Shown here piece after piece: positions 9,302-59,003 of a stretch of DNA of 64,000 bases. The stretch lies in the NCBI GenBank assembly GCA_977030845.1, contig OZ365114.1:22320001-22384000 (forward strand), in the 5' to 3' direction. Both the position numbers and the translations under genes were made by a program. The notes beneath the pieces are model-generated. The model was not told the origin of the DNA, did no database searches, and saw only the letters and a list, made by a program, of their open reading frames with translations. Every line of letters begins with the position of its first letter. The stretch's first letter is position 1. Origin of the DNA: Fimbriosthenelais zetlandica (lineage: Eukaryota).

Positions 9302-10261
9302 TCAAACTGTACCCTGGAGAGTTGGGATCCGTGGATGATAATGGTCTTCAGGCTTGACCAGTACATAGGCCACGGGTCTGTGAATGTCCTGGGAGGAGGG
9401 GGAAGAGGCAGCTGCCGAGCTAGCCGACCCTGGAGGCATGTAACCTGGAGGACAGCAGAACGGCATATATTGGCTGGCGAGGCCGGCATGGGTGTGAGCT
9501 GCCGCCGGCGGGAGACCGGCGAAGGGCGACCCGTATGGGAACATACTGGAGGCGGCCGCGGCCGTCACGGCACTAGAAGGTAAATCGCCAGTGGCAGCCC
9601 GGAGTGAACTCTCCGCCAGCTTGGAGGCTGATTCAAGATGGGAATACAATGGGGAGGATACTTGGGGGTACCAGGAGCGGACTGCCTTCTCTGTGGCCGC
9701 CATGGCTAGGGTATCAGAGGCAGAAGGGGGCAACCCACCGAGCCCCTGTGCATGCAATCCCATACCCATATTCATACCCAAAGTTCCCATTCCTATCCCC
9801 AGGGAACCACCATACCCTGGAAGCATTGGCAATGGGAATGCATACTTGTCCTTCTTTAGCAGACTTTTGGGCTTGCGTCTGGGTCTGTACTTGTAGTCAG
9901 GATGCTCTTTCATGTGTAATGCCCTCAATCGTTTGGCTTCGTCAATGAATGGTCTCTTCTGCTCATCGGTCAAAAGTTTCCAGTCTGCGCCAAGTCTCTT
10001 TGAGATTTCTGAGTTGTGCATCTTTGGATTTTCCTGGGCCATTTTCCTCCGTTGACCTCTGGACCACACCATGAAGGCGTTCATGGGGCGTTTAACATGA
10101 TCAGATGATGAGGAGGAGGAGGACGGGCAGGTTCCACCACTTGATGAGCTAGGTGATATAGGTGGTGATAAACTACCTGCCTGAGACATCATACTGCTGC
10201 ACGACTGAGACATCATGTGGTGGACACTGCTGCCCTGCGATAACAATCCTGGTCCATCCAT
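9302..10261 (-). CDS. SoxB2: SoxB2 (Sox14/Sox21-like) HMG-box transcription factor, copy A, 319 aa, single coding exon
   Basis: Complete HMG box [41 protein letters not shown]...[11 protein letters not shown], followed by the group-B motif [14 protein letters not shown]. Downstream SoxB2-type motifs, compared with Sox14/21 from memory: LHA..GG, EKA.R..PQ, SKLAE, YMP.C, PVAYVL. The first ATG is at 10261; the track's 10300 start is a TTG. Confidence 0.95.
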
Positions 10262-10872
10262 GTTTACAAGCAAACAAATGTCACTGGCTACTAGAGTCAA
10301 TATATCTTACTCTGTAAGAATAGATAAGGAAGGATGCAACGACTGACCAGATATACCGTGAAGATTCACTCAGTTCCTGATGATTAAATCTCCTTTATGT
10401 ATTGTGCTGAAATGTTGAGTTCAGTTCTGAATGAATATTTCCACTTGTGAATTAATACTCCAGTGGTTCATTGGATTAACTTGCAATGGATTGTCTTTGG
10501 TCCTGTTATGTGAGTTGACATCTGACAGCTATGCTCCACATGATTTGTGTCCTTTAAGTGTCACTCAGTCAGTTGCTGCTCTGTCACTCTCTCCCTCTCT
10601 GTGTTCCATTCAGGCTTGCTGAATTCCACTTTCCTATTTGGTTCCAAGATTACTGCTGGTTAGATCGTTTCTTTGGTTAAATGCTGGGGCAATCTTGACA
10701 AAATAGAGGTATTTCTTGCAGACTGTCACACACGCACACGATGAGGAGTCTGCTGTGAGTGTGTTAAACGTGTGTTAGTTCTCAGACGATCAGATCTCGA
10801 CTCAACCACCACACACAAGATACCTGGATAGCAGGATAGTACTCGCCTCGCCCTCAGCCATACGCGCCTTAA

Positions 10873-10967
10873 CCAATCACATCGCTGTGCGGGTCTAGGC
10901 CACGCCTCTCCCTTTGTATTTCTCCTGTGATTGGCGCCCCATTGATGGGAAATCTAGATTCTTATTG
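10873..10967 (-). promoter_or_regulatory. Proximal promoter module of SoxB2 copy A
   Basis: CCAAT 10873, CCACGCC (SP/KLF-like) 10900, CTTTGT (Sox) 10912, ATTGG 10930 and a further ATTGG near 10963. It lies about 600 bp upstream of the ATG and has the same layout as the module upstream of copy B. Confidence 0.6.
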
Positions 10968-11351
10968 GCTGCCGGCAGTGCGTGCCTCATTAAACATGTG
11001 AACAGGCAGGGGGTCGGATTCATGTGCTTCTGTGAGTGTTAGAAGTGAGAAATATTGTCTTACTCAATCAACTCGAGAATTAAGAAATGTTTTCGCGCTA
11101 AGGAAACTATTAACACTCTCCAAATGTCTATACTCATCATATAAATTGTGAGAGAGGCCATTAGTTAGAGTTCAAATGCCCAAATCATGACCTTTATAGA
11201 TATATTCATGCACTTGAGACCATTTGTTATGGAGTTAAAGCTACACTATTTTATATTCTTGGTTCTCAATAATCTGTAAAGGTTGCGCCCAAGGAGGTCT
11301 ATTACTCTTTTTCTCAGTCCTAAATAATCTACTAAGGCTGAGCACATGAAA

Positions 11352-11455
11352 TTCTATTAATGCTGCCCTACTTTGTTTCCTGATTGCTGGACACTAGACA
11401 AACTTCTATTAATGCTGCCCTACTTTGTTTACTGATTGCTGGACACTAGACAAAC
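11352..11455. repeat. Tandem duplication of a 52-bp unit (2 copies, 1 mismatch)
   Basis: TTCTATTAATGCTGCCCTACTTTGTTT(C/A)CTGATTGCTGGACACTAGACAAAC at 11352-11403 and 11404-11455. A partial third start occurs near 11478. Confidence 0.95.
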
Positions 11456-13391
11456 TGATAATATTATATGCATGCAATTCTATTAAAGCTGTCCTTCCAT
11501 TGTCCAAGAGTTAACTGTCCTCGAAAACAAATTAATGCTTCCAGACAAACATGCATGTTATAGAAATAGAGGCAGGCAGACAGAAAGAGATTACTCATAT
11601 GGACAGGAATACTAGCTATGGGGCAAATAGAAGTTGTATTGAGAAGATGGACAAAGGCAGAAGACAGGGATGGGGACAGGGACAGAGATACTAGGAGATT
11701 TATACGACTCTCAGTCATTAGAACCCAGTGAATATTCCACCCACAGTTGTAGGGGAAAGTGTTGAGCAACAGCTGTATCTTAGTTCCCGCGCTAAACACT
11801 AGGGGGATGTACTTGTCAGGCGCGCCCCAGTCTCTGGGTTCTTATCTTACCTGCAGATTGTTGGTTCATATAGTTGTAGATTGATACAACTGTACATGTA
11901 TATCGGAGGAAACAATTGAAGAAGTACATGAACATAGAACATCTCATTAAATAGTTCCTTTGTTTGCTTCATGTATTGCCTTTGTAGAAGTAGACAATGC
12001 CCGTGTGTGACATAATACATGTTATGTATTATTAATAACAAAGCTGCACCCATAATGGTCACTATAGGAGATTTAATCACATCCTATAGCTGTGGATCCA
12101 CACCTCAACTTCACAATATTTCACATAATTATAGGTGTTAATTACCCGCCTTTTACCGCATGCATATATTTTCATTCATTCAATGAGAACTGGTGTGAAA
12201 ATATCCATTTATGTTGGAGGATTGCTGCATCATCTTGTCATGAATCAAAGTCCAATGAAAGTGGACATTATTCAGGGACAAATGTATGTAGACAATGCTC
12301 TTGCCTGTGTCTACATACATCCTGGTGTCTGGTGATGCTGTATCATGCTTTCACAGTGTAAATAATGCCTTATGATGCCTCTAACATACTATCTCTATAC
12401 CGTTGAATAATGCCATAGTGGAGAACTATGTAGATGAATAGCGCTATGATGGAGAATAGCACGTGGGATGTTCCGTAATGGATAGACATGGCGGTCGCTA
12501 ATTTTTCCTATAGACATTGTGTCGAAAAGGGAAGTTTATTGTCTCGTTGTTACAGGCCTTTCCAGACCCACTTGAATATTTCACAGGGCTATATATAATC
12601 GCAGTCATGCAGTCTTTCACAGCTCTACAAGGCATCATAATTATTGACCTGTATGTATAGGTATACCATTAATACATGTACAGATATACCTGCAGTTAAC
12701 AGTAACTGCAAATCTATGTTTTATCTACAAAGTTTGGAAGGCACACCTTTCATGGGCACTGCTAGGGTAAATATACACGTATGTGCTGGAATTATTGCAA
12801 TTGAGAACCTAGCTTCTGGTATTAGTCTTATAGCATGTCTGCCGACGTGAGGGTTTTATATACTAATTATCATAATATGAATTGACAGTGTCAATAATAC
12901 ATGAAGATATTTTATATCTAGAGCAAACAAAAGGTTCAGGATCAAAAGCCCTCCGACCCGTGGATCCCCTCAAACTTATCTGATGCAAATCTAAACACAG
13001 AATGTAATAATGCTCCTATCTCAAGCCCAGATTCCCTCTATCTCAAGTTAGTTAATTTTCTCCTTCCTGTTCTGGCACTTACGTGTAACCACTCTATACA
13101 ATATAAACTATATTATGTTATGTCTCCTACAAAGGGACGTTGATAAACCCTAACCCTATGCCTAATCCGAAAAATAATAGATTTTTGAACGTGTACAAAT
13201 GAAATGATATGTCTCACACCTAGTTTAACTTATTTTAGATTTATTTGTTTTTGACACAATATATATCCTATTATTTAGACCCACGTGAGGTGTCTAATTG
13301 CATGTTTGCTCTTCATGCAACTAATCATAAATATATGAAGGACTGAACACAAAGGAAGCTGTCTCAAACAGTAATTACATGTATTATTTTT

Positions 13392-13406
13392 TATTGTTAT
13401 GCTAAA
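13392..13406 (+). promoter_or_regulatory. Sox-POU composite motif candidate
   Basis: TATTGTTATGCTAAA resembles the CWTTGTNATGCWAAT Sox-Oct composite. The context is AT-rich, so chance is possible. Confidence 0.3.
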
Positions 13407-15162
13407 ATTAATATCATAGTTATATTAATAGACAGTGTATTGGATGCCAGTGCTGTCATCAGAGGGGGCAAATTAGTTTATTCTGAACTGATATTGTATC
13501 CAGTTTTCCTTTAGCTGCCACTAACAGATCATTGGGATATTTTCCACATTTATCCTGCAAATCATTTACCAATAGTACTAGCATATAAAATGCATAGATG
13601 ATAAATGATATTATATGCAATTGTAATATTCTCACTTCCAACAAAGCATATGTTTATTCAACTTCTGAAAAGCACAGGGATATTCAGTCCACATGACATT
13701 ATTGTTAGGAAGAAACATTATGGTAAATGAACAATACACATTTGTCCCATTTCTTTAAGGTGATCTACCTGGAATTTAGCACCTCTTTCCAACTTATCCC
13801 TACCTGAACAAACAAATAATCATAAAAAAGTCAATAATCGGTCTAAATAATTGGTGCTACGGGCCTCAAGCTGTCAAGTGATTGAAAACATTAAGCAATA
13901 TGATATGATATAGTTATAAAATTTCTGTATACTGGGAATAATACATTTGGTGTTTCATTCAGCAAATTACAGTTGAACACAAAAGAATGAGTACAGAAAT
14001 CACCTATTTCTGTCACCTGAAAAGTTAACCATATCCTCATAGATCGTTCACCATTGAATACACCTTTGACAAATGTTCAATAGAGGTCTTCTCTGCAATA
14101 ATCAATATGATGAGGTAATTAGCCTTTGCATGGGAAGGGCAGACAAAGGTGGTAGACATGATCTACAGTTGAGCTATACACTAGTCCCTGTCAAGGTGTC
14201 AGAGCTAATTGTAGGCCCCTCTAATGTATGTCCACAATAAGCTGGCCAACATGGCGTGTCCACAAAGTGTGTGAACTTGCTCATGTATTTTCATCTTATG
14301 GCTACGATTTTTGCGTTATTCTGTTAAATTTGATTATATTATTCAAATTCAACAAATGAGCTGAGACACCCAGTGCTACTGAAAATGCTGAGAATAAATG
14401 TATTAGCTCTGCAGGTCGAAGGGAAATTATGCCTTACGCGTATTCCCATGGATGTATCATGTATGTTATATGGTGAGTTGAAAACACCAAAACATACATC
14501 TAAGTTTATTGTGTAATTAGTAGTGGAAATGTCAAAATATATATTATTCAAATTATGGCACTATTGTGGGTCAGTTATTTTGAAGTAGTACAGGTAAATT
14601 ACAGTATACTCAATCCCATATACATGTAGCTCTGTATGTACTGGAATAGACATAAAGGTTGGCTTGTTGGTGCCAAGTCCTCCAGGAGGCTGCCAATTAT
14701 TAACAAAGACTCTTCCATTAAATGGAGATTAACGGTCAATAGGTATTGTTACCTCTACTAGCAAGACATACAGAGGTAACGGGCCTCTTCACAGCGAGGT
14801 GTGAGAATGTGCGCCTTACTCCAGCTCTATCTAATAGGCTTGGGATCCAACTGAGAGCCTGGGATTCAATAGCTTAACAAGTAGAAATTCAATAGTCCTC
14901 AATGTGCAATTGACTCGAATAAAGAGATTGTTAATGCTTATGGTATTAGTAGATGGTACTGAACAATGGAATACGGTGTTAAAAGCCATTTATATGCGTC
15001 TGATTGTAGCGCCTGCAGAGGCTTGGCAAATAGCTATTAATATAGCTAAATCAGCCATCAAAGCAATCAATGGAGTGTGTTCAAATGGACCCCTGGCTCA
15101 TGTGGTCTTTCTAATTTTGAGGGAGTTGCCCAATGTAATAAGATATAGATTAAGCTACCCCT

Positions 15163-15377
15163 ACACTGGAGGCGTAGGAGAGCCTAAATTGAAACGCATG
15201 TGTCAGAAAACCCATCGTGCGTACCCTGACAGTGCGTCTCTGGTCGTCGCACAAACGCGTGCGTCTGAATGCATTCCAGCGTGGATGGTGAACACAAATG
15301 GCCAAATAAAAAGCTTCCATAGACATGTGTTTAGCTCAGGCGTCTATCAGGGACAAAAGTACGCACGCCTCCAGTGT
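15163..15377. mobile_element. Decayed MITE/fold-back element with CACTG...CAGTG ends
   Basis: Perfect 13-bp inverted repeats ACACTGGAGGCGT (15163-15175) / ACGCCTCCAGTGT (15365-15377). Inner inverted pairs are CGTGCGTAC/GTACGCACG and CCCTGA/TCAGGG. No clean TSD. Confidence 0.5.
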
Positions 15378-17583
15378 GTCAGTACCGTATTAAAGTTTTA
15401 GTTAAAGAAGTGTGGATGCATGAAAGTATAATAGGCTGTGACGTGAAGTGAATTATAGATGTAGAGTAGATGATTAGTGGCTACAAAATAAACCCTGACC
15501 CAGGATCTGTTCACTCTGTGTATCTGGGACGATCTGTTACGAAATGAACTAAAGTTGACAATTTAGTTCTTTAGTCCCCTTGTTTCATAAAGGCCACTCT
15601 TAACCTATTGTTAATGTGAATGCAGAGTACAATGTATGATACAGTTACTGTAACATGCACTCATCTTACATAGGATCAGGGTGTGGTGGCACATATTTTG
15701 TGATATAAAATACAAAGCATTCTTGTAATGATGAAAGAGTACCTTGACCCCTTGATTCATAATATTATGTGCATCACAATTAAGAATTTCATTGGTGAGA
15801 TGAAATTTGGAGTATATATGTACATGTTTCTAATCATTGTGCTATATCACATTATAGAGTATGGAAACTGTAGCTTCATATATAGACTCGACAAGGTTTC
15901 AAAGGCATGTTAAGGACTGATAAATTGCAGAACTGTTATTGGTAAGGGAAATAGTAATGAATCCAGCAAGACATGTGCCTCTACGGAGAAAAGATGGTAA
16001 CTTGTCTGTTCATGAGTGCGTGTGTGTGTTGTGGGGAGATTGTTGCATCTCTCCTTATCAGCCGTTGATATAGCAGCCACACATTGCCTCTTAGAAGAAC
16101 CAATGCTGGGCGAGATGAGAAAAGTCATACCGGAAGGCACTGTCTCCAATCGCATTATGGGTAAACATGGCGGACACAATGATGACTTGTGGGAAGGCAT
16201 CAGTGGACAGTGTCTGAGTGAAGGCTGCCATTGACAGCTGGGTAAATAGAAATTAACAGGCGCGGAGTGATCCAAACATAGCAGCCAGGCCGAGACACGA
16301 GCGACTCGAGCTCAGCGTGAGCACCTTACACACTGTAGCTCGAGTATACTTGATGTAAATAATGAGTTATGAATGTAACCACAGGGGTAGAAATAAGCTT
16401 GATCAGCTTGCTTCAGTTCTTCCATTGCTTCTATTCTTCTTTCACCCTGTTTTCTGCAACGTGGTGTCTTAGTTATAATGTCTTAGTTAATTTAACGTTT
16501 CTTCTCGGTCTAGCTTATATGTATTAAGGGTAATTCCTATGCTTCTCTTTAGAGTCTGTCATCATTATATATCTACAGGCCATAGCTTTAGCATCATATT
16601 ATCTTCTATTTGACTTTTCAAGAGGAAGTGAACTTTTTTTATTGGTCAGTAGTCTATACATAAATGTCCCTTTCTCGATACTTCCCGTGTGTCGATGGTC
16701 TGAGGTGCTCCGAGTCCAACAAGGTCCTTGACACCGGTCACTGCTCTCTACAATGAAAGGCAGTGCTCACTTCCGGTCAAAATCTGGCACCCATTCCCCT
16801 ATTATCGCACACTTGTAATAAGTGCCAAGTGATCTCTCGTCATGGTCTATTTATTTTGTCCACTTCCAAAAGGCTTTTTATTCTCCACAATGACGTCACC
16901 TAGGGCGACAAGGAGTCTAATAGAGATGACAGAAAAAGGGGCATTGATAGAGCAGAGAACATGATAAATGCTGACGGGGGGATTGATCCGTGTATGAATT
17001 TCCATGTGACCAGCACTCCACCTTATCCCAACCCCGGCCACCCAGCCCTACTTCATCACACAACGATCAATGGTCGATTCATATCTTGATTTGTCCTTAA
17101 TTGTGAGATCTAAAGCGCAGCTTTTGGTGTGAGCAACAAATGCATGAATGATGACTTGAAGTATGGAACCATTAATAGAGCGCCATTGACTGTTGCTTGG
17201 CACAATGGCGCCACGCTTTAAAAGCGGCGGCTTCATCAATCAGCGCTGTGGACCCACCAGTAATATGACGTACTGGCCGTCAGGATCTGACTTCTACCGC
17301 TGCCTCGAGCTGCTGGCAACAAACCTTGCCACCAAAAGGGGGGCACATGGATTGTGCGTTGGATTCCAGGAATCTGAGATGGCTTAGGTTGCAATTGCTT
17401 CTCTATTGGCAGAGAGATTTGGCTGAAACTATTATGGAAGTTGTTGAAAATGCCTGGGTTATTGAATGCCTGTCGCCTTATTATTATCCCAATCATTTGA
17501 GGACCTCCCATTCCCAGACCTTAGAAATATTTGTCACTACATCATGTCATTCTTGCCTATGTCTTATGAAATCCCATGCATAG

Positions 17584-17651
17584 CCCCCCCACCCCCCCCC
17601 CCCCCCCCCCCCACCCCTCACTCATGGCTACACCCCCCCCCCCCCCCACCC
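17584..17651. repeat. Two poly-C tracts (G4-capable on the minus strand)
   Basis: C-runs interrupted by single A at 17584-17617 and 17633-17651. Confidence 0.9.
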
Positions 17652-29459: not shown

Positions 29460-29800
29460 TATCCCATCCTTCCCCTACTTCCTTATCTATAGATATCTGT
29501 CCATATCTTTCTGCATCCTACCTATATCTGCCTTTTCCCTACCTCCCTATCTATCAGGCTTCACCTGACCTCCATATCTGCCTGCCTTTTCCCTACCTCC
29601 CTATCTCGCTGCCTTCCCCCTACTTCCCTATCTATCTGCCTACCCCCTACCTACCTATCTCTCTGTCTTCCCCCTACCTCCCTATCTCTTTGCCTGGGTA
29701 CCTCCTATCTCTCTGCCTTCCCCCTACTCCCTGTCTCTCTGTCTTCCCCTACCTCCCTATCTATCTGCCTTCCCTGTTCCCTGCTTCCCCGAGTTCTTCT
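29460..29800. repeat. Pyrimidine-rich minisatellite, unit about 27 bp
   Basis: Degenerate copies of TCTGCCTTCCCCCTACCTCCCTATCTC; clearest at 29575-29775. Confidence 0.85.
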
Positions 29801-41689: not shown

Positions 41690-42776
41690 TGAAGAGGACC
41701 ACCGCATTTCGTGATGGACAGGTATGTCTGCAGGTTGCATGTGCATGGGTGGAGGCCGGGAAGAGGACACATGTTCCTAGAAGAGGAGCACCGTATTAGT
41801 TTAGTGAAGTACATGTAAACCAGGTGTACTTCTGTTCAGGTTGCATGTGGGTGGAGGCCGGGGAAGAGGAGCACCACAATTCTGCATATGAGATGTTCCT
41901 AGAGTAGGAGCATCGCATTAGTTTAGTGAAGTACATGTAAACCAGGGTGAACTGTACTTCGGTTAGGGTTGCATGTGGGTGGAGGCTGGGGAAGAGGAGC
42001 ACCACAATTCTGCATAGGAGACGTTCGTAGAAGAGGAGCACCGCATTAGTTTAGTGAAGTACATGTAAACCAGGTTGAACTGTACTTCTGTTCAGGTTGC
42101 ATGTGGGTGGAGGCCGGGGAAGAGGAGTGCCACAATTCTGCGTAGAAGAGGAGCACCGCATTAGTTTATTGAAGTACATGTAAACCAGGTTGAACTGTAC
42201 TTCTGATAGGGTTGCATGTGGGTGGAGGCCGGGGAAGAGGAGCACCACAATTCTGCATAGGAGACGTTCGTAGAAGAGGAGCACCGCATTAGTTTATCAG
42301 GCGCGGATTTAGGTGGGGGGCGCCCCCTATTTTTTAGGGTTAACTTAACCTTAACCCTAACCCTAGGTTTCAGCCTATAGGGTAAACGCTAACCCTAGGG
42401 TTAGGGACCCTAACACGGCGCCTCCCCCCCCCCCCCCCCCCCCCCTTTTGAAAAATCCTGGATCCGCCCCTGTTTAGTGAAGTACATGTAAACCAGGGTG
42501 AACTGTACTTCGGTTAGGGTTGCATGTGGGTGGAGGCTGGGGAAGAGGAGCACCACAATTTTGCATAGGAGACATTCTTAGAAGAGGAGCACCGCATTAG
42601 TTTATTGAAGTACATGTAAACCAGGTTGAACTGTGCTTCTGATAGGGTTGCATGTGGGTGGAGGCCGGGGAAGAGGAGCACCCACAATTCTGCATAGGAC
42701 ATGTTTCTAGAAGAGGAGCACCGCATTAGTTTATTGAAGTACATGTAAACCCGGTTGAACCATACTTCTGTTAGGG
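41690..42776. repeat. Minisatellite, unit 115-129 bp (mode 128), about 8 copies, interrupted by an insertion
   Basis: The marker GTACATGTAAAC ends at 41820, 41942, 42070, 42185, 42493, 42621 and 42750. Each unit has two GAAGAGGAGCACC(A/G)CA sub-repeats. Confidence 0.97.
42298..42472. mobile_element. 175-bp MITE-like insertion with 16-bp imperfect TIRs, a 5-bp target duplication and internal telomere-type repeats
   Basis: Ends are CAGGCGCGGATTTAGG / CCTGGATCCGCCCCTG (13/16). The interrupted unit spans 308 bp = 128 + 175 + 5, with flanks TTTAT/TTTAG. The interior has TTAGGG/CCCTAA hexamers and a C-run. Confidence 0.85.
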
Positions 42777-45700
42777 TGAATTCTGCACGTCTGCTCACTG
42801 AAGGGGAGAATTGTTTAGTACATCGAAATATATGTAAACCTTGCTTAATGTCCACTTTGGAGACTTTGAATCACCCAGTCTCAGCAGACCATAATTTGAT
42901 ATTTCCCCTATAGAAGATTTACTAATATTTTACATGAAATCATATCAGATTTCTTTTTGAGGAATATCTCATTTCGGTGAGTAGCTGCAGAGATTTTCCA
43001 AAGAGCTGTATAGACCCTTTCACAACCATTGCCACAGCTACAGCTTTAGGCTGCAGAGAATACCCAATTGTCCAAACTCAAAGTTTGAACATAGAAACTG
43101 AAGCAGCTGATTCTTGGGAGCATTTCTCTCTGGTGCTTACTTCTACATTTAATACAAATGTTTGCACGATTTCTCTTCTTCCTGCTTCCTGCTCATCGTC
43201 TTAACAACTTCTAAGCAGGAAAGAACCTGCTAAAGTAGAAAATGCCTGGCTCAAATTTCTCCAGTGTGTTTTGTCCCTGTGGTCTGACAAGAGATATTTT
43301 GTGTCAGGAGACAGTAGGGTGAACTGGAGGCGGGATGCAGCTATAGCGACACAATGCCCGACTCCTCTTTCTTTTCGTGTTTGCCCGTATGGAATAGAAG
43401 GACTGGAAATGACCGTGATTCCGCACGACAATGCCCGACCAAGAGAACATCCATGTGGTGTAGGGTTAGCAAAAACATCGGGGGCTCCTGAACACAATGT
43501 TTTGTGCTTAAGTTATAAAAAGCCCTGCACGAAAACAAGAATAAAGACGCCGTTTGTAAAATGTAGAAGAAAAGAAGAGTTTCAGCAGGTCCCTCATGGG
43601 GACTGTGGGCCATTATAGGGTCTTGACAATACCATTTGGAAGCACATGCCAGTCCTTTATGTTCCAGACTGTCTTAGACTGTCTCCAGATTTGATCATTT
43701 ACAAAGGCCAAATCGGATCCGTCCTCTATGACCAAAAATACATCTTGCTTCTATTCTTCTAGGAGAAGATCATAAAAACCATCACTTCATAGCAATATAG
43801 TGTGTTTGCTAATTGCAAATACAAAGGACACTTATTGAAGTGTAGCAGTTGAATTTGGCATTCAAAAACTGAATGGCAATCATAGGCCTATAGTGAAAGT
43901 AATACACCATTGGTGCATCATGCATTATAATAACCCTCGCCCCATGTTGGTCCAGTTGGTGGTGGAAGGGGAAGGGTTGGGGTGTAGATCCTAGCACTCT
44001 TGTCTCAATTGAAGTGACGGTGTCCATTCTAGATGTTAATAACCAAGAGGGAATGACATATATTCATAGTAAATATGCAGAAAACTAGCTGATTTAAAAT
44101 ATGGTAGTCTGCATTATGGATCATTCCACCTATGGCGGCATACAGTGTATTCCCATACATCAAATCACACTGCAGCCTTTCAGTGGGAACCATGGCAAAG
44201 AAATCCTCTCTGTGGTTTGCTTTCACGAGGCTTATCACAACTTGACAATAGCTGAGCTAGGAGAAGTAAAATCTGGTTGTGGGGGGTCAGATGAAGGGGA
44301 GGTGCCGAGAATATATGGCAAGCATGCCTGCAGCCAAAGATCCTATACCGACCTTTCTCTGCGAATCGAAGAAAACATTCTCATTCTGACTCTATCAGCA
44401 ACGTAATTCCAGGTTGAAATTGATATTTGGCGGACGACAATGTATTTGTGATGGGGTGAGTAGCTGTGAATGGCTCGGGGCGCATTATTCTGCTGGCTAT
44501 GGGCAACTCAGGTCTTCTCTTGGTAAACACCCCCTGGCATACATCCCACTCAACCACGTGAGAAATGATGCGACTCCGATGGGAGAAGACTGGGATAACA
44601 GTTAGTGAGGCAGGTTGTTAGCCACTATATGATTTTTGCCATGGATATGTCCCTGAAATTGTTATTGCCTTATTGTGACATACTACTAGCATTGTTATAA
44701 TATTTAATGCAATACTGCAGTCCTTACTTGTATGTCCCTGTTCTATTTGGCTTAATGCAGTGGATTATCTTATTAAGTAGTTAACTATATGAATACAAAA
44801 TATCAACAGGTGAACATGGAGGGGGAAAAGATGCTCCTTGACAAGGATCTATACTTTATTGAGACTCCGTGAACCATAACAAACCCCTGCTGGAAAAAAG
44901 ATTTCTGATTTTGGGGGTTTTCAACATTTCTTTGGAATTGCTCCAGCATGAGCATATCGGCAAGCATACTGTTTCACCCTCATGCCCTAAGACACTGGCT
45001 TTGAGCCCTTTGGACCAATGGGCACATGTGCCATGAACTTTGTATAAGGTGGGAGAAGGGATCGATGCTCATGGCCACCAGGAGCGATTCAATTTCTCAA
45101 TTACCCTCTGATCTCCTCAATGCTCCTGGAGCAAGAGGTTGAGCAGAGAAAGAAGGGGCCACCGTGGAGGAGGACGTAAAGAGCGTGAACTTCTTGCCCT
45201 CTGTTATTTTGTGTAGGAGGCCCTGGAGAAAGCCCTCTGGCAAAGGTCAATCACAACCGCTGAGCGTCTCCTGACGACCAAATAGAAGAGAGCAGATGAC
45301 ATGGCGCCCCTTCACCCTGAGGATAGGTACTATCAGTCTATTATACACAAAAGGGGTCCATTGACACAGCGACCTCCCCGGGCATGGCCTGCACCACTAT
45401 GCGGATGGTCAATACGACAACATGGACACTCAAAATGGCGGTATGATTGAGACATTGACAGACGGCCAACGGCAGCGCTTCGTGTGAGCCACCTCGGAAA
45501 TAGAACTCACACTCTCCAAACAGATCATTTCCCATCATTCACAATGCGACTGTGAAGTGTCTTTTCAAACCTTTCACACAGGAGAGTGCTTAGTGCATCC
45601 ACGTAGGCCGCAGGTCTGAGAAGGTGACGACCTCTATGCCAACTTCTCTATTATTGCCCACTGTCCAGCCTTTTCTTCTTCATTGCTGGGCCACTATGAT

Positions 45701-48576: not shown

Positions 48577-51500
48577 GAGGAGGTGCGAGCGCTACATTCA
48601 TGCGATCCCAGAAGGAGGCTCCAGGGCAGGCCCTGCAATAGAGGGCACCACCAAGTTCTTGCACCTCCATATTGGAGTTCCTTTGCCTGGGTACATCTCA
48701 ATATTTAACCCTTTCTCAGAGCTTCTAGACATAGATTTGCATTAAGATATTTTAATGTCATCTGCCATCAAAATTTATCCAAATATTTTCATTAATTTCC
48801 ATTTGAGGGAGATTTGCACTTCGTATATTGCTCTTCAGTATCATGTAATCTGAAGCTCCATTTTAAGATGCATTCAGAGCCATGTATATTCTATGATCAT
48901 GGCTGCCATTGCCAGATTTTCACCTGCGTTTCCCTCGTTGATGGAGAAAGGGTGAAGCAAGTACTCATGCAGTGGTGAGGGCATGCGAGGCCAGGGCCAT
49001 GCACGCTTCATCTTAAAGAATGGCTTCTAATATGGCCTCTTGAAGGGTGGTAGCCTATATATGCTGACCTTAGAATGGCAAGGAAGAAATGGATATTATC
49101 TCATAGTTATTGGTAGACCATTCTGCAGTTAAGTTGAAGGATGCCCACAAAATTTTATTCTGCAATTGTATTCATCCATCTGAAGGCATGTATTTAGAGA
49201 CCAGCACCAGCTCGTCTGAAGACCCTTGCCTTCTGGGAAGCAGTTCTTGTCATCTTTGAAAGTGGTCTGCTGAACCCCTACAACCAGTTCTGTCTCCATG
49301 TTGAAACAACTTCCTCACAGTTTGGCAAACTTTTCTGTGGTTTGACGACACGTCAACCCCCACCACATTGAGCTGTCCTTATTGGCAGCGTGGATCCTGC
49401 TGAGAGATGGTGCGCCTAGGCCAAATAATCTGAGGCACACATCAGAAAGCACTATGGGCATGGGTCGCGGCGGCTCAGAGCAGGGCCAGGGGTCACATTC
49501 TGTTGCTCGAATGATACGATTGTGCTGAAATAGTGCCTAATGATGGCATTATCCAGCCGTCAGGTCCAATTCGGTCCCGTCCCGCCCGATCCCATCCAAC
49601 AATAGCCTGGCCGGGAATTGTTGGGAGTCTTTGACAGTTTTCGATGCAGATCTTTATCGGCCACAACGGTGGTCGTGCGTCTATTTCGATAGCCATAATA
49701 CGTCTGATAATACAGCTTTCTCAAACGTGTCGTTTCGGTTCTAATGCAACTGTCAACGTGGCGTTTCGCTCCGTTGTTGCACTGTTCCACATTTTCTATC
49801 ACACCAAAAGCTCCGGGCGATGGAGATCTGTCAATAGGGGATGGAGGCCGTAATACCCCCGTTTATCGCCCAGTTACAGCGCCACAAACGAAAACACTTG
49901 GCTATTACAGCAGCCCCACACGGCAGGCAGGAGTCTGGAGATTCTATGGCACCTTTCATACAAGTTTTTGACAGTTGTGAAGATGGGGGACTTGGTGGAT
50001 TGTTTTCTGTGACAGACCGAGAACCCGCCACGACCAGATAGCCACCACCATAAAGGCCCTGCCTCTCACAGATATCTATAATGCACTTTCTTCTGGGCCC
50101 TCGTTTTTTCCCCTCGGTTTTCAGAAAGCTTCCAGTTTCAGAAATTTTATTTACCTAGGCCATGGACTATTTGATTCATTGGGCGGCTGGGCTTTTGTCG
50201 ATTATGCTTATTGTGGAGTTGTCACAAATCCCTGCTCAGCCCTGTGTTTGGATTTCTGCTGAGTGCTACATGAATGCTTTTGCTGGAAAAGTCTTAAAGT
50301 TTTTGTTACTTTATACTTCAGGAAGTCCTATATTCTCACCCATCGAATGATATGGCAATAACACATAAATTCAGAGCATAGCCTGTTTCTAAATTAATAC
50401 CCAATTAACTTCAATAATCGTGATCATAGAATAAAAATACATTTGTTCAACCTCGAGTACCAGATATCGAGCATCCAAGTATTTAATAGTTACTTCAATC
50501 AATTAGTGATAATGAGGCAATAACCGATAAAAAAAAGTTATTATGAGAGATGTTTAATTAATGGCCTGGTATGAAGTAAGCTTCTTTTCCTCAGCGAAAA
50601 TGGATGTTCAAATGACATTTTTAACATTCTGTATGTGCGGAAACATGAACATCTTCCCATAATTATGGCACTCCTGTGTTACGTCTATCGATTAAATATA
50701 GGCCTAAGTTCTGGGAACAAAATAAAACAACTGACCTTCCCCACGAGGTTATTTATACGTATCAACATAGGTGGGTGACTTTGATCTGTTCGGAAAGGCA
50801 AATTTGGCGTGATGTGAGGACCGACTGTTCTGCAAGGTCCTCAAGCCAACATTTACCCTGCCTTTTCTCCCCTCACAGATTGCTTTGTCAGCAATACAAA
50901 GCCAAGGTCACTGACATAATGGTGGCCGCCAAACACTTACACATGTACCCAGTCAGACTGCTGTTCTGGCTGTTGGTACAGTACAAAGCAATTGTCCAAG
51001 ACCTTTCTATTTTATACACGCCAAACAATAACCACCTGGCAGAGATCACAGTCACTTGAGTAAGTGTGGGCTTGGCAAAGTTGCCATTACACATACACCC
51101 AACTTTTCAGTTTTGGCTGAGCTATGCTTTGTCTTTAACCATACCCCCTATATCTTCCTACCATCTTTTGCCGTGACTCACCCCTGAAGGTATAGGTTAT
51201 GGCTTGTTCCGTCTTTTAACACTGGCTCCGACTAGTGAGAGTTTGATAAACCTCGGAGTGTTCTGCTGTTTCTCTGTCCTCTCCAATGTGACCAAAAAGG
51301 GAAATGTCTGTTCTATTCCCTTGATTGTCAATGTTTTACTACCTTGCTTTTAACTATTATATCGTCTATCAGTTTCTTTGATTGAATGAAATAATATATA
51401 CATTTTTGGAAGGTGGTGTACTGGAATATAATTGTGGGCATCCTGTTATATATTTATTGGCAGCATCCTTCCTTTTCCCATCAAGACAGTGATGTGGAAA

Positions 51501-54500
51501 TATACGTAGGCCAAAAATGTGTATGTATGAGAAGACACATGCCACATATAAATACTGGTAATACCACATACAAGCCTTAATAATGTCCATAATGGAAATG
51601 GAATCATTCAAAAGGAACTAGTTGCACTTATGCCATCTCTGACGTTGTATTTGAGTTATGTGTCACATTTCTCTGTTTATGGGGGAAGTTATCAGATATA
51701 TTTTCATGTGAAATATAGTGGACGCATTGTAAGCCTTGCAAGTGTGTGTCTCGTAGATCATGGGACTGAATCAATGCATTAAACCACAATGTATAGGTTG
51801 ATTGCGGCACCAAAGGCATCCTACCAGTTGCTATTCTGTTTGTTGGTATAGGTGTGTTCCTATGGCTTTGTTTGGTGTAAAAGGCAAGCCTGAATAGTTG
51901 GGTGGTGACAAAATTCAATCTATTCCGGATGATACTTGGTGTTTTATAATTGCCAGTCGTGATATTCCAACATATGGAAATTATTGTTAAAAAGATTGTT
52001 AATTGAGATATTGAGGAACCATGTACGTCCTATTCTGACATGTAATAGTTTGCTGTTAGAAGTGTATATTACTAAATTTATCACAGTCTTTCTTCATTGC
52101 CATGCCCATGCCCATGGTTACAGTGACAAAGAGACATTTGTCCAACATCTTCGACCTTCTTTTTAGTTCTGAACTCTGACCCCACATTGCCCCCATTCAA
52201 CTCCTACCACTGCCCCCACCTCTCCTCCCCACCTATGCACCCCTTTGCCCTCCTCCTGTTCCACAGCGCCCTCTTCATCCTAACAAAGAGGAAAAAATTG
52301 TTTCCAGCCTCCCTTTCATTGCTCCCCTTTTCAGAATTATCGCGTTCATTAGTTGTGTTTTCATTGTGGCGGCTCGCTCATCGTTCGGTGTGTGTAAACA
52401 AAATGCCTGCCATCGCTGCAGGGGCTCAGCCAAGACCAGCCAAGGGCCCAAGGTGACAAAGCAGTCCTTGTCGATCGAATAACACTACTCATTTAGAAGC
52501 ATTCAAAGGCTAAATTGCCGGATGAATGACTTGGCTATATATTGAATTCCAGCTAATGAATGCCCGCTGGTGTGGTGCGCATTATTTGACATTAGCGACC
52601 ATTGAGCTTCGGCCGGCTGGAAAATACACCATGTTATCTTCCAAATAACTGTGATGTGATTATAGGGTCGGGAGAAGGAGCCGCCCGTGATGCTTGACCC
52701 CGCTGCTATGGTGGTCCAGGCTGAGTACACATGCGCCCCCTATTGTAGACAGTTCGTGCTCCTGGACCACCGTAGTTAACGTCGTTGGCATGGTAGGAGA
52801 TGACGTTGTATATCGTGTTATGTGCGGTCTGTGATCAGAGATCAAGTCCACCTCCCTATCGCCTGTGTGAGGGAGTATGTGTATTAGTCAATCGCTATGT
52901 GTTAAAGCTCGCTTGTGGGTCCCCGCGTCCCTGCGACGTTGCACCATTTCCTTATACTACTATGACCAGGTCTGCTTCTGGAACCATGTAAGTAGTATAG
53001 AAAAATTGAACATTGCCTCAGGCGAAAAATAAACAAATTCATCATAAATGGGCCAACAATTCTCTCAACTGATGTGCATTCACCACTTGAACCCCTCCTA
53101 CCATTGAAATAATAATTATTATAGTCATAACCGGAATCTCGCACAACACCCCAGTTTTTTTCTGCCCTTTTTTTCTTCCCTCCAAGTGATTCACATGGTG
53201 TCCAATTTGTATTGCCCCAAGTTCGACTTGATGAAATGAAACCTCATGTTGTATGTATAGGCTATAGAGATATCCTACTTGCACTGTCTTGACATCGGGC
53301 ACCGTTTTTATACAATAAAGGCAAGAAATGTATCTTAGACATAAAGACAAGGGATTTATACTGATTTGCTCTAGTAGCCTATAAGTGCCAGATGTGCACC
53401 CTCTCTGCTTCCTCCCTTCTGCCCTCACCGAATGTTGCCAAGCCGATTACAGGGTCCATAGCAACGCCCGCCTTTCAAAACCACAGTCCTCCTCTCTAAT
53501 TCTCCCACTCCAACACCCTGCCAGATAATCGATACAACAAGCATAAAACAAACACCACGCTATGTTGACTCCGCCAATTTGTTATCGTCATCTTCTTCTC
53601 CTTTTCCACCGTGACCATGCATGATGAGGCCAGTGATTGCAGTCCTGGGTCCATGCTAACAACAACAAACAAAAACAAGCGGTTAAAGATAAAGAAGCCC
53701 GGCGTAAATGGCCTAGTTTCCCCCTTGCCAAGACGAGCTAAATTGAGGTGTCGGGTTTGATGCCCTACTGATGGGCCTGACTCCTGTCACATGTTCCCGC
53801 CGCCGGCCACCTATATTTTACACTCGGCTGAGTTTCCCGCCGTAAGTTCATTTGTCGTCTGCTCACCCAGTTTCCTGCCATGAATCCATTTTATCGTCTG
53901 CTCATCAGCTGATCGTGTGAGTCTGTAGTCGCGCCTTTTCGGTTGTTGGTATAGGACAACTGCAGTGATTTTTCATGGGCTATTCTCGTGAGCTCTTACC
54001 GTTTTTCATTAGGTCTAGATTCTGGAGAAAATGAAAGATCTATAGAAACAAAGATGCCGTTGAATGTTATGCAACCATTTTTGTCTGAGCTAACACCTAA
54101 TACGTTTAGGAACATTATCAATTATCTCCATTTAGAATGTAAATGGCCTTATAAATTGAAGGCTCAAAACAAGCCAAAGCTTTATGAAAGTGGGGGAAAA
54201 TCAAACATCTGCATTAATTTTTTTTGTAAAGCATTGATATGAAAATTGTCTCCACATATACATCACTTAACATTTGATGCTCTTAATTCCTTAATTCTTT
54301 TATAATTCGCATTTTATCGCCAAGCACTCTGCTTCCGAGTCCCTCAGCAGGATCTCGCGTCAAGTCTCGTTAATTCTCTAGCCAGGAACGCGAGGTTTAA
54401 TAAGTGATGACAACAGATTTATTAAAGCCTACTTCAGGTCTCACGCCACAAACCTGCGTCTCGATCCGTACCTTTGTTCTGTAGCTTCCGTCATATTAAT

Positions 54501-56822
54501 CTGCAGTCCGCCTTCCCCTTCTCCTCTCATCCTCCCAACACCTGTTTCTCCACCCAAATTACCACCGTCCGCCCCGGCCCTATTCACTCGCACTCAATAG
54601 GCCTTTGACGGCGGTAATTCACCGGCTTTAACTCCCGTTGAGCTGTCAGTGGAGAGCTGGGAAAATTAGTGTGGCGTTTTGTGTGGAAGTGCTTGCTGCA
54701 CACCCCCACTCCGCCCCACCCCGACCGCCAGTGTAACATATTCGGAGATGAAGCGCGACCTGGCGGGGTAATTGGCAATTACTAAACTGGACAAGAGTGC
54801 GCATGTGTGAAAAGAGAGAGGGGTTTGGAGACGTAGTTGATAGGGCAAAAAAGGTGGGGCCAGTTGTCCACATTCTTCCCATATTTCCTCCTGCAGGAAG
54901 ATAGAGCTCGGAAGATGCTGGGAAGTATGTAGATATATATAGACAGGAGTTCTGCTGATAGGTGTGAAGGTAGCTTAACAAGCCCGATGAATTATGTTCA
55001 ACTATCAGATGATGGAATAAGAGTGATGTGATTTTACGATGTTTAAAACAGAAATAATGAGTTTCTCCAGTCACAACAGTTGAGCTTATTTGAGGTATAT
55101 ATTTGCCCCTATATAATTGGATTTTTGCGAAATTGTTTTATTTAAAAATAATTTAAATAGTGCATATTTAGGGAACAATATACGCATTTAAAAAAATAAC
55201 CATAAGGAGGAAGTTTCAAACTGACGTTTATGTTTATTCATTCGATTATTGATGTACACATGCCTTTCATCCTCTTAAAGACCTCTCTTTTTATTATTTG
55301 AAGCACTTGTAACAATAATTATCTCACATTAAATGTGTATTTTCCCACAATACTCTTTAGCAATATTCGCACAGACTGAAAAGTGTATCCTTCTAGATTC
55401 TGGCAGAAAGTCAGTAGGAATAAAATTTAGCTTCGCCAAAACAGAACAAAACATTAACAACAATGTATACTTATGATAAGTTATGGAATAAACAATGTGC
55501 TCACGCCCAACCACAACACTATAACTATTGATAATAATCACCATTGGTACAATCATCGAGTTTCAGACAACAACCGCATAATAACACTGCAACATCTACA
55601 TCCTATTGACGCCCATTGTTAATTAGTAATTCCATTAATCATGATTAGTCCTATATTCATTAACTTAAAACCCCTCTCTGTGGTCCTCTTTAACGAGCAC
55701 TTGTTCATTAATAAACAAGATTCCATTCCACTCATTAATGTCATTCTTCTGCACAATTACAATCCCTAAATTGCAGTTTCAGCCAATTATGCAAATGTTA
55801 TCACATAACGAAGAAGCAAGAATATGAGTGTAGGAGTTAAGGAACTTCTCACAGAAAACAAGGTTATCTACTGAGAAATGAATGTCCTTTTTACTCTCAT
55901 CTCGTTTTCGTCGGCATGGATTATTTATAAAGAGCACCATTGTAATCATATAGTCCAAGTCCTATTCTTTTTTATGGTGTAGGGAGGTAAGGATGTAGGT
56001 TTAAGGATGGCCTTTAATTGTTGAATGCTTTAGTGGTGAATGAACTATTCTGTGATGGAGAACATTACATGTTCTTGGTCTTCAGGCAGGGTAGACCGGG
56101 GAAGTCACAGGATGTTTGACGGAAAGGGGAGGCACGCAGTCGGTGGGCTATTATCCCTGTTTCCCGGGATGACAAAGGGTCTCGGCAGGTTTCTAAAGAT
56201 TAATTGGCAAGGAATGTATCTGGAAATATAAAACACAATATTGATGAGTCCTTGACAATATACTTGGGTGACATGACTTGCTTGCCCTAAAAATATTGAA
56301 ATCCGTGATATACTAATTATGTACATGTGCGTGTATCTATGTAGCAGTAGCTTATATCATTAATGTTCATAGAAATATTGAGACTAAAACATAAACTCTT
56401 GCGGCGGATATATGACGGATTTCTATAATAACTTGCTCAACTGAAGGCATGAATTGTAGCTGCATTATAATATCTAGGGAAGTTGACTGATGGATTTTAT
56501 ATATGCAATACAGTCTCATATCACCACGATGCCAAACAGATATTGCATCTTTCCTGAAGATCTAAAGGAAGAGATGCCATACGCACGCATTCAGTATCCA
56601 TTCAGGGAGAATTCAGTGATTTCAGAAACGGGTATTTAACCCAATACAACGTGACGTGTGCATTTTTTATTTACTGAGCCAGGGACATAGTTATAGTGGC
56701 CAGCTGGATTCAGTTGAGAGTTACTATAGTCACTATACAAAGTCCCCTATGAAGGGACTACCTAGAGTTTCTCCTATTTCCTATTCACCCCACACCTCCC
56801 CTCTCACGTGTAATAGGTAGAA

Positions 56823-56872
56823 GGGCCTGGGGGTGGGGAGGCAGGGTGGGGTGTCTGGAGAGGATGGGAGGG
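56823..56872 (+). other. Putative G-quadruplex-forming sequence
   Basis: GGGCCTGGGGGTGGGGAGGCAGGGTGGGG satisfies the pattern of four G3+ runs with 1-7 nt loops; two more G3 runs follow. Confidence 0.6.
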
Positions 56873-57970
56873 TGAGAGGAGCAGAAGGGTTTGGTAACAT
56901 TGTGCATTTACTCCCCTATAGAAAATCAATGCACAGGGAAACAATTAGGTCGTCATTTGTGAGATAACAATGCTATCATTGACGGCTGAAGGAAGGGAGA
57001 GCGCTTCCTAAATGATATATAATCAATATATTCATCCGCGGCCGCTTACAAATAACATCATCCTCATCAGACATGAATGTGTCATTAAGCCCGACCCAAA
57101 ATACGATGACAGTCTCTGAGTCTATACTATAAATCTTCTCTCTACACGCACTCCTCCTCTTTACTTAATTAATAACACACCCACAGCCCTGCTCCAACCA
57201 TATGAATTTCCTATTTCAGTTTTCCCCCAAATTCTGTTAATTTGATATTTCTTTTTCATGAAATGTGAACAATACATTCCATATCATGATTTTATTCCTG
57301 ATATTCCTCTATTTCTAAGATCTCTCTTATAGCTGGACTCGAAATGAAAGAAAAACATGATATACATGTCATATTATTGCATAATTAGGTCTTGATTGAA
57401 TATTCGAAGGCGGATGAATATGAATGGTATTGTTGGAAGTATTTCATTTCCGCCATGGGTCTATATCGCGGTTATAAAACTTGCCAACATAATTAGTAAC
57501 GGGAAAGGTCCAGTTTCCTAAATTCCTAAAGAAAATATGGTTACCATGCAGTCCAAAAGAATTTATGTGCGGTAATTTATATTAAAAGTGCCTATATATA
57601 TATTTATTTTATCGATTCAAATTCTGCTTGTGATTATGGACAAACGCATCACCTAGATTGCTGAAACTATCTTAAATATGGAAATTATTGGTTTTTTTGT
57701 GTTTGCTCATTGCGATATAACGTAATGTTGCTTACCTTTTCTCTCTTTCTTCAACGGATCTTCATTTATGGACGCGTCAAGCCACCGACTCCCAGACCTG
57801 ATATTGGCCCAGATTAAAGATGCTTCCTCCAGAGTGTTTCCATCCAGGTCATGTGCCCATAGGAAATAGGAAGTCTATATATATACGTGGACGTTTGCCT
57901 TTCAAGACGAGAGGATTTGGAAAACATTTGTCAGTGTTGGGGATCCAAATTTCGGAAGTTGGAGAATCAG

Positions 57971-57976
57971 TTTATT
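57971..57976 (-). terminator. Candidate polyadenylation signal for SoxB2 copy B
   Basis: AATAAA on the minus strand 125 nt past the stop codon; a second one lies at 57603-57608. Confidence 0.4.
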
Positions 57977-58100
57977 TTTAATTGAATGATGAGTGTCCAA
58001 TATCACAGGTACAGAGATAATAAATCATAGACAGGGGCATCCTTTTAAAAATAGTTCATTTTTCATGTCTATGACAAACTAAAGGCCTTTAATTAGGCGG

Positions 58101-59003
58101 TTATATTGTGCCAGTCACTTTGCTTCTCTCTCCGGGTTTGTGTAACAGTACATAGGCCGCCAGAGGGTGTCTAAAATCAGACTGACTTGATGGAAGGCTA
58201 AATGAGGGGTGAGCAGCCAAGCCAGGGGTTCCCCATGGCCCTAACATGTACTGACTGGAATGTTGACTGGTGAGCCCACCAGATGAGAAGGGCCCCAGCC
58301 CGGCGGGGTATGGGAAGAGGCTCGGCGAGGTGTGTAGATCGTGGGGCCTGATGGGGCCGTGGCCCTCGGCCTCGGCGCGACGATGCCCGGCAACTGCTGC
58401 GGCACTGGCTGCTGCTGCTGCAGGATCAAGATGCGGGTAAAGCGAGGTAGGCAAGTGAGGCATGAAAGAACGAGACATGTCACTAAGAGCTGCAGCTGAC
58501 AATAAATCAGCAGCTGACGGCTGGCCACCAGAGTAACTCAGACCACACCCATAACCCTGCAGGTAGGGCATGGGAAATGCATACTTGTCCTTCTTCAGCA
58601 GACTTTTGGGCTTGCGTCTGGGTCTGTACTTGTAGTCAGGATGCTCTTTCATGTGTAACGCCCTCAACCGTTTGGCTTCGTCAATGAATGGTCTCTTCTG
58701 CTCATCACTTAAAAGTTTCCATTCGGCTCCGAGTCGCTTTGAGATTTCTGAATTGTGCATCTTTGGATTTTCCTGGGCCATTTTCCTCCTCTGTCCTCTG
58801 GACCAGACCATGAAGGCGTTCATGGGGCGTTTAACATGCTCTTCCTCACTGCTGACCACTGGTCGAGTTGGCTGTCCAGGCCTCTGTGAGTGACCGGCCA
58901 TCTGGCTCATCATGGGTGATAATGGAGACATTCGAGAGAGTGGCGACAGTGAGGAGACTGGCGAAATGGGCCTCGTCTCTTCTTGAATCATCCTATCAGA
59001 CAT
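58101..59003 (-). CDS. SoxB2: SoxB2 (Sox14/Sox21-like) HMG-box transcription factor, copy B, 300 aa, single coding exon; more divergent paralogue
   Basis: Complete HMG box plus [15 protein letters not shown]-terminal [11 protein letters not shown] resembles the SoxB2 PxAYxL motif. ATG at 59003, TAA at 58101-58103, no internal stops. Confidence 0.93.

What the first reader, a model, noticed from the sequence alone, without database searches (positions are those of the whole stretch)
9837..58838. Domain-restricted homogenisation (probable gene conversion) of the HMG box between two old SoxB2 paralogues
Hand alignment of 9837-10099 with 58576-58838 gives 263 bp with no gaps and 16 differences (94% identity). 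Only two amino acids change (D/E, T/S), so about 13-14 differences are silent over about 87 codons. Identity is patchy: perfect runs of 62, 38, 37 and 32 bp, with 9 of the 16 differences inside 9968-10013. Outside this block the proteins align only at scattered motifs with indels, and the UTRs do not align. Protein-level selection does not explain conserved synonymous sites. Recurrent intrachromosomal conversion would keep DNA-binding specificity shared while the effector tails diverge (inference).
Basis: partly seen in the sequence, partly recalled or inferred. Interest (0 to 1): 0.85.

Follow-up and report, generated by a model that had tools for sequence, protein, structure and literature searches.

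The report
Gene conversion between tandem Sox genes
Two neighbouring SoxB2-type developmental regulator genes in this invertebrate genome have copied their DNA-binding (HMG box) segment from one another since the species diverged, while the rest of each gene evolved separately. This is a well-supported new example of a known process, and it warns that Sox trees built from the HMG box alone can mislead.

Summary
Window 9837-10099 and 58576-58838 align without gaps, with 16 differences in 263 bp, and this is the only DNA similarity between the two loci. They are the HMG boxes of two intronless SoxB2-type genes on the minus strand: A (9302-10261) and B (58101-59003), head to tail and 48 kb apart.

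A related species (ENA ERZ25767047) has orthologues of both genes in the same order and orientation.
- In the HMG box, 38 informative sites group the genes by species, 1 by paralogue and 0 otherwise.
- In the tails, 95 sites group by paralogue and 18 by species.
- Between species, HMG synonymous sites are saturated (pS 0.82-0.89). Within species, pS is 0.31 and 0.19.
- Codon bias does not explain this. Identical residues use the same codon in 81-88% of cases inside the box, against 31-48% outside it.
- A GENECONV-like permutation gives P=0.0002 in each species.

"Recurrent" conversion and the proposed functional benefit are not shown. B is a lineage-restricted, fast-evolving SoxB2 duplicate. 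Domain-limited conversion between linked transcription-factor paralogues is already known (Capitella Dlx, hexapod engrailed/invected), so this is a new member of a known kind.

The parts
9302..10261 (-). Gene A: intronless SoxB2-type gene, 319 aa plus stop. It has the canonical lophotrochozoan SoxB2 tail ending ...[17 protein letters not shown]...
   Evidence: ORF list; Pfam HMG_box 1.6e-27 and SOXp 9e-8; best hits are Sox-14-like/SoxB2 proteins of nemerteans, annelids and molluscs; orthologues P0002/P0165, P0001 and P0003.
58101..59003 (-). Gene B: intronless divergent SoxB2 paralogue, 300 aa plus stop. It lies upstream of A in the direction of transcription. Its tail is collinear with A's but only about 34% identical, ending ...[18 protein letters not shown]...
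   Evidence: ORF list; Pfam HMG_box 8e-28 and SOXp 1e-6; orthologues P0060 (75%) and P0055 (64%); tail vs A tail E=3e-6, vs vertebrate Sox2 no match; tail found only in the P0060 cluster.
9832..10102 (-). Homogenised (converted) tract in gene A: the HMG box from HVKRP to KDKYAF. The ungapped core is 9837-10099.
58570..58841 (-). Homogenised (converted) tract in gene B: the HMG box. The ungapped core is 58576-58838.
9968..10013 (-). More divergent patch inside the tract in A (9 of the 16 differences, including both amino-acid differences D/E and T/S). The matching patch in B is 58707-58752.
   Evidence: At four silent sites (9986, 9989, 9992, 9997) gene A carries the unique base, while B, both sp2 genes and mostly sp4 agree.
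58707..58752 (-). The same divergent patch in gene B.
10873..10934 (-). Upstream module of gene A: CCAAT box, Sox-site-like ACAAAGG, GC/CACCC box and inverted CCAAT box, 673 nt before the ATG. It is not part of the converted tract. It shows that the promoter was duplicated with the gene.
59813..59873 (-). The equivalent upstream module of gene B (Sox-site-like ACAATAG), 870 nt before the ATG.

Best explanation
Genes A and B are tandem, same-strand SoxB2 duplicates that arose before the window species, sp2 and sp3 diverged. Since that divergence, about 250-270 bp coding for the HMG box has been overwritten between the two genes by non-allelic (interlocus) gene conversion, independently in the window lineage and in the sp2 lineage. 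The likely mechanism is that a break in one copy is repaired using the other copy's HMG box as template. The tract stops where the flanks are too diverged, and too full of indels, to pair. That region of remaining homology is the part kept alike by purifying selection on the DNA-binding domain, so the restriction to the domain is probably a mechanical consequence rather than an adaptation. Shown here: the switch of phylogenetic signal at the box borders, the homogenised silent sites, the orthology of the tails and the conserved gene order. Inferred: the molecular mechanism, the direction (probably A to B), the number of events, and any functional benefit.
For: HMG box (267 nt): A_win/B_win 18 differences and A_sp2/B_sp2 8-10, against A_win/A_sp2 53 and B_win/B_sp2 49.
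Quartet informative sites, species/paralogue/cross: HMG 38/1/0, N-terminal tail 1/16/1, C-terminal tail 17/79/6. Bootstrap support is 100% each way, and FastTree supports of 1.00 give opposite topologies for box and tails.
pS, HMG vs tails: 0.31 vs 0.79 in the window and 0.19 vs 0.58 in sp2. Orthologue pS in the HMG box is 0.82-0.89.
Codon-bias control at residues identical in all four genes: same codon within the window pair 65/80 in the box vs 16/47 in the tails (p=1.3e-7); sp2 pair 71/80 vs 26/47 (p=3e-5).
GENECONV-like permutation: the best fragment lies inside the box, P=0.0002 in each species.
The two window loci share no other DNA similarity.
In sp2 both genes lie on one 1.54-Mb contig, in the same order and orientation, 161 kb apart, and again on a second contig (probably the other haplotype).
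The upstream promoter module groups by paralogue across species.
In sp3 the B protein carries four derived residues in the last third of the box, which B of the window and of sp2 lack. This is consistent with A-type sequence having overwritten B.
Against: DNA for both paralogues was available from only one other species, so the number and timing of events is poorly resolved. Species-specific codon bias is real (sp2 GC3 0.83-0.88) and produces some within-species codon sharing even in the tails, although far less than in the box. Within-species HMG divergence (pS 0.19-0.31) shows that the last events are not recent, so ongoing conversion is not demonstrated. No population or read data were examined.
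Confidence: 0.9

Rival explanations
1. There was no conversion. Extreme constraint on HMG codons, combined with species-specific codon preference, makes the two boxes converge at silent sites within each genome.
For: The two species differ strongly in GC3 (0.53-0.58 vs 0.69-0.88). In the tails, residues conserved in all four genes also share codons more often within a species (34% and 55%) than between orthologues (19%).
Against: The within-species identical-codon share in the box is 81-89%, far above the tail background (p=1.3e-7 and 3e-5). The orthologue identical-codon share in the box (43-48%) is close to background. Window GC3 is about 0.57, which is only a weak bias. The permutation test localises a discrete fragment.
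Confidence: 0.04
2. A was duplicated recently and independently in each species, and the B tail then diverged very fast.
For: The HMG boxes group by species.
Against: The B tails of the window, sp2 and sp3 are clearly orthologous: 75% and 64% protein identity, and 95 vs 18 informative sites. A/B tail pS is saturated at 0.79. Order, orientation and paralogue-specific promoter flanks are conserved between species.
Confidence: 0.02
3. Exchange occurred by unequal crossing-over or by cDNA-templated repair rather than by classical DNA-to-DNA conversion between the loci.
For: Both genes are intronless and lie in direct orientation, so an mRNA-derived template, or two crossovers, could produce the same pattern.
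Against: A single unequal crossover would produce chimaeric genes and change the copy number. Here both tails on both sides of the box keep their paralogue identity. A cDNA template cannot be told apart from a genomic one with these data.
Confidence: 0.04

Closest known systems
Capitella teleta Dlxa/Dlxb homeobox gene conversion (McDougall et al. 2011, PMC3199776)
   Same: These are linked, otherwise divergent duplicates of a developmental transcription factor in a lophotrochozoan. Nucleotide identity, silent sites included, is confined to the DNA-binding domain and has a mosaic pattern. The authors attributed it to gene conversion using Geneconv.
   Different: That case involves a homeobox rather than an HMG box, a tail-to-tail pair that is closely linked, genes with an intron, and 98.4% identity (a more recent event). 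It was inferred within one species. Here two species with both paralogues show the topology switch directly, and the genes are head to tail, 48-166 kb apart.
Hexapod engrailed/invected concerted evolution (Peel, Telford & Akam 2006, as cited in PMC3199776, ref. 49; the paper itself was not held)
   Same: Concerted evolution of the conserved domain region between linked transcription-factor paralogues that predate the species splits.
   Different: A different gene family and phylum.
Branchiostoma floridae SoxB1c, next to SoxB2 (Zhong et al. 2011, PMC3029401, Table 1 footnote)
   Same: A suggestion that gene conversion acted between linked group-B Sox genes.
   Different: It is proposed to explain an ambiguous B1/B2 identity at the protein level. 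I saw no silent-site or cross-species test in the passages I read.
Arthropod SoxB2 tandem cluster (Dichaete, Sox21a, Sox21b; PMC3029401, PMC1166547)
   Same: A lineage-specific tandem expansion of SoxB2 into linked genes with divergent tails.
   Different: It is an independent duplication in another phylum. The only conversion mentioned there is a possible explanation for an intron gain.

Membership tests
Sox group B2 (Sox14/21 type): gene A | Sox-type HMG box with the B2 signature residues at HMG positions 2 and 78. Zhong 2011 names the positions; the residues (H and P in B2, R and T in B1) are from my own knowledge. | tested here: met
   [10 protein letters not shown]... and ...RRKPK are present. 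Pfam HMG_box 1.6e-27.
Sox group B2 (Sox14/21 type): gene A | B2-specific motif outside the HMG box, near the C-terminus. | tested here: met
   [15 protein letters not shown] is shared with SoxB2/Sox-14-like proteins of nemerteans, annelids and molluscs.
Sox group B2 (Sox14/21 type): gene B | HMG signature residues H2 and P78. | tested here: inconclusive
   The residues are present, but the box has been overwritten from the paralogue, so it says nothing about B's origin.
Sox group B2 (Sox14/21 type): gene B | Tail homologous to SoxB2 tails and not to SoxB1 tails. | tested here: met
   B tail vs A tail E=3e-6. The alignment is collinear through PSAxD, LYxHL, FPY, SQYM and AYVL. There is no match to a vertebrate Sox2 and a weak collinear match to Platynereis SoxB.
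Interlocus gene conversion / concerted evolution | Within the tract, paralogues of one genome are closer to each other than to their orthologues. | tested here: met
   18 and 8-10 differences within species against 49-54 between species; 38:1:0 informative sites.
Interlocus gene conversion / concerted evolution | Flanking parts of the same genes show the orthologous topology, so the duplication predates speciation. | tested here: met
   Tails: 95 paralogue vs 18 species sites at the nucleotide level, 45 vs 2 at the amino-acid level. Synteny is conserved.
Interlocus gene conversion / concerted evolution | Silent sites are homogenised beyond what codon bias gives. | tested here: met
Interlocus gene conversion / concerted evolution | A discrete fragment that is significant under site permutation (GENECONV-type test). 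| tested here: met
   My own implementation gave P=0.0002 in both species, with the fragments inside the HMG block. The GENECONV program itself was not run.
Interlocus gene conversion / concerted evolution | Direct evidence of ongoing exchange, such as segregating conversion tracts or shared polymorphism. | not testable with these tools
   The two sp2 contig copies differ at 5 HMG sites, all explicable as new mutations. No population reads were available.

The most novel reading that the evidence does not exclude
Conversion is long-running and directional. The slowly evolving canonical gene A repeatedly 'repairs' the HMG box of the fast-evolving gene B, and where this lapses (sp3, whose B box has four derived residues) B's DNA-binding domain starts to drift. 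The divergent 46-bp patch in the window, which holds both amino-acid differences, would then be either a segment protected from conversion by selection for paralogue-specific residues, or a segment imported into A from a third Sox gene.
Probability: 0.25. Interest if true: 0.5.

Novelty: new member of a known kind. Interest (0 to 1): 0.38.

Why it matters
Sox genes are usually classified and dated from the HMG box alone. Here an HMG-only tree would wrongly infer two recent, species-specific duplications, whereas the tails, the promoters and the synteny show one older duplication. The case gives a clean two-lineage example of domain-limited concerted evolution in the Sox family. It also gives a natural experiment: two transcription factors with the same DNA-binding domain but different effector tails. 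Finally it documents a lineage-restricted second SoxB2 gene in a lophotrochozoan clade, where a single SoxB2 is the reported norm (Capitella and Lottia have one each in PMC3029401, Table 1).

Tried and rejected
- DNA for the third species (ERZ26222911; proteins P0001 and P0055) could not be fetched because the sample's file is too large. Only its proteins were used.
I replaced it with FastTree and a site-pattern bootstrap.
- A paper search for the sp4 assembly accession found nothing, and cluster look-ups gave no organism names. The taxon therefore remains 'lophotrochozoan, probably annelid'.
- Rfam and tRNA scans of the window found nothing.
- I first read the sp2 haplotype variants as possible evidence of ongoing conversion, then rejected this. 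Where a variant matches the paralogue, it is simply the ancestral base.
- I considered whether B could be the linked SoxB1 gene with a converted box. I rejected this because its tail is collinear with SoxB2 tails and has no match to Sox2.
- Peel et al. 2006 was not held.
- No structure prediction was run, because the HMG fold is not in question.
Full report
**What is there.** The window carries two intronless Sox genes on the minus strand. Gene A is 9302-10261 (319 aa) and gene B is 58101-59003 (300 aa).
- Both have a Pfam HMG_box (E about 1e-27) followed by the SOXp region.
- B lies upstream of A in the direction of transcription, with about 47.8 kb between them. That interval contains no long ORF, no third HMG box, no tRNA gene and no Rfam family match.
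- A's best named relatives are Sox-14-like/SoxB2 proteins of nemerteans, annelids and molluscs. A ends in the motif [15 protein letters not shown] that those proteins share.
- B's tail is collinear with A's, motif by motif, but only about 34% identical (E=3e-6). It has no similarity to a Sox2 tail. B is therefore a diverged SoxB2 duplicate, not the SoxB1 gene that is ancestrally linked to SoxB2 (PMC3029401).

**Check of the observation.**
- The block is 263 ungapped columns with 16 differences. There are perfect runs of 62, 38, 37 and 32 bp, and nine differences lie within 9968-10013.
- Two residues change; the other 13 nucleotide differences are silent.
- blastn of the two loci with their flanks finds only 9832-10102 vs 58570-58841.

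**Decisive comparison.** Protein searches found orthologues of both genes in two other unnamed assemblies.
- In ENA ERZ25767047 ('sp2'), the A orthologue (P0002/P0165) and the B orthologue (P0060) lie on one 1.54-Mb contig. They have the same order and orientation as in the window and are 161 kb apart. The pair recurs on a second contig, probably the other haplotype.
- In ERZ26222911 ('sp3'), both proteins exist (P0001, P0055), but the DNA could not be fetched.
- A fourth assembly (GCA_022702875.1, 'sp4') gave an A-type gene that I used as an outgroup.

| Pair compared (267-nt HMG block) | Differences |
|---|---|
| A_win vs B_win | 18 |
| A_sp2 vs B_sp2 | 8-10 |
| A_win vs A_sp2 | 53 |
| B_win vs B_sp2 | 49 |

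Orthologue synonymous sites in the box are saturated (pS 0.82-0.89).

| Region | Sites grouping by species | By paralogue | Cross |
|---|---|---|---|
| HMG box | 38 | 1 | 0 |
| N-terminal tail | 1 | 16 | 1 |
| C-terminal tail | 17 | 79 | 6 |

- The single paralogue-supporting site in the HMG box lies at its 3' edge.
- FastTree and a site bootstrap give full support to opposite topologies for the box and the tails.
- pS between A and B is 0.31 in the box against 0.79 in the tails in the window, and 0.19 against 0.58 in sp2.

**Controls.**
- Codon bias is a real confounder. sp2 has GC3 of 0.83-0.88 in the tails, against about 0.55 in the window genes. At tail residues conserved in all four genes, codons are shared somewhat more often within species than between orthologues.
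- The excess in the box is nonetheless far larger. The window pair shares the codon at 65/80 such residues in the box against 16/47 in the tails (p=1.3e-7). The sp2 pair shares it at 71/80 against 26/47 (p=3e-5).
- Orthologue pairs share codons in the box at only 43-48%, close to background.
- A GENECONV-style permutation of polymorphic sites places the best A/B fragment inside the box in both species (P=0.0002 each). It finds no such fragment for the cross-species A/B pairs.

**Interpretation.**
- The duplication predates the split of the window species, sp2 and sp3. A and B tails give the same topology, sp3 outside (window, sp2).
- The HMG box was homogenised after that split, separately in at least two lineages. 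This is interlocus gene conversion.
- The tract is about 265 bp in the window and slightly shorter at the 3' end in sp2. It ends where protein-level conservation, and therefore DNA homology, ends. The restriction to the domain is thus most simply a consequence of where pairing is still possible.
- Within-species divergence (pS 0.19-0.31) shows that the last events are not recent. Ongoing exchange is not shown, and the sp2 haplotype variants are ordinary new mutations.
- In sp3 the B protein has four derived residues (V, M, R, T) in the last third of the box, which B of the window and of sp2 lack. This is consistent with A-type sequence having overwritten B in the other two lineages, but without the DNA it remains an inference.
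The SoxB2 HMG protein sequence is nearly invariant from amphioxus to molluscs.

**Age and spread of B.** A phmmer scan of B's tail against 1.84 billion representative proteins found only the P0060 cluster.
- A and B of the three species also share 'DEQ' in the box, and 'GYG' just after it, where other lophotrochozoans differ.
- B is therefore a lineage-restricted, fast-evolving duplicate.
- Both tails are under purifying selection between species: pN 0.21-0.26 against saturated pS.
- The organism is a lophotrochozoan. Other notes of this scan call the genome annelid-like, and the tail tree places the A clade beside Platynereis. I did not establish the taxon.

**Comparison with what is known.**
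- Conversion limited to the DNA-binding domain of linked transcription-factor duplicates has been described for Capitella Dlxa/Dlxb, and, as cited in that paper, for hexapod engrailed/invected (PMC3199776).
- For group-B Sox genes, I found only a footnote suggesting conversion for amphioxus SoxB1c, and a remark on a possible intron gain in Drosophila (PMC3029401, PMC1166547).
- Searches for Sox, HMG box and gene conversion or concerted evolution returned nothing else.
- This is therefore a new, unusually clean member of a known kind.

**Unexplained.** Nine of the sixteen differences sit in 46 bp (post hoc scan P about 0.009). At four silent sites there, gene A carries the unique base, while B, both sp2 genes and mostly sp4 agree. 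This could be a segment missed by the last conversion, a segment protected because it holds the two amino-acid differences, or a short import from a third Sox gene. None of these could be tested here.

Noticed in passing
window 10873-10934 and 59813-59873; L005:9056-9106, L001:8963-9013, L003:8887-8947: A conserved upstream module lies 0.7-1.1 kb before the ATG of both paralogues in both species. It consists of a CCAAT box, a Sox-binding-like site (ACAATAG or ACAAAGG), a GGG(C/T)GTGG GC/CACCC box and an inverted CCAAT box. The pattern occurs only at these two places in the 64-kb window (0.01 expected). Its 5' flank groups by paralogue across species (AATGGGGCGCCAATCA in A, CCTGCCAATC in B), unlike the HMG box. 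It may be a shared core promoter with auto- or cross-regulation by Sox proteins; that is inference.
   Followed up: partly
window 9983-9997 (gene A): A cluster of silent substitutions plus the D/E change lies within 15 bp. At the four silent sites (9986, 9989, 9992, 9997) gene A is the odd one out: B, both sp2 genes and mostly the sp4 outgroup agree with one another. At 9983 (D/E) A alone encodes Asp, but the other genes do not share one base. A short import from a third Sox gene is possible but was not tested.
   Followed up: partly
HMG box residues KLL(T/S)DEQKRP in A and B of the window, L001/L003/L005, and P0001/P0055: All six A and B proteins of the three related species have DEQ where other lophotrochozoan SoxB2 proteins have EEE or EDE. 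This is a clade signature present in both paralogues.
   Followed up: no
L001, L003, L005 coding regions vs the window genes: There is a strong compositional shift between related species. GC3 is 0.83-0.88 in the sp2 Sox tails and 0.53-0.56 in the window genes. The intergenic distance is 161-166 kb in sp2 and 48 kb in the window.
   Followed up: no
window 11352-11456; 41773-42777; 29525-29774: A 52-bp unit is repeated twice (98% identical) about 1.1 kb upstream of gene A and contains a CTTTGTT Sox-like motif. A satellite of about 128 bp (roughly 4 + 2.4 copies) and a 27-bp C/T-rich minisatellite lie in the intergenic desert.
   Followed up: no
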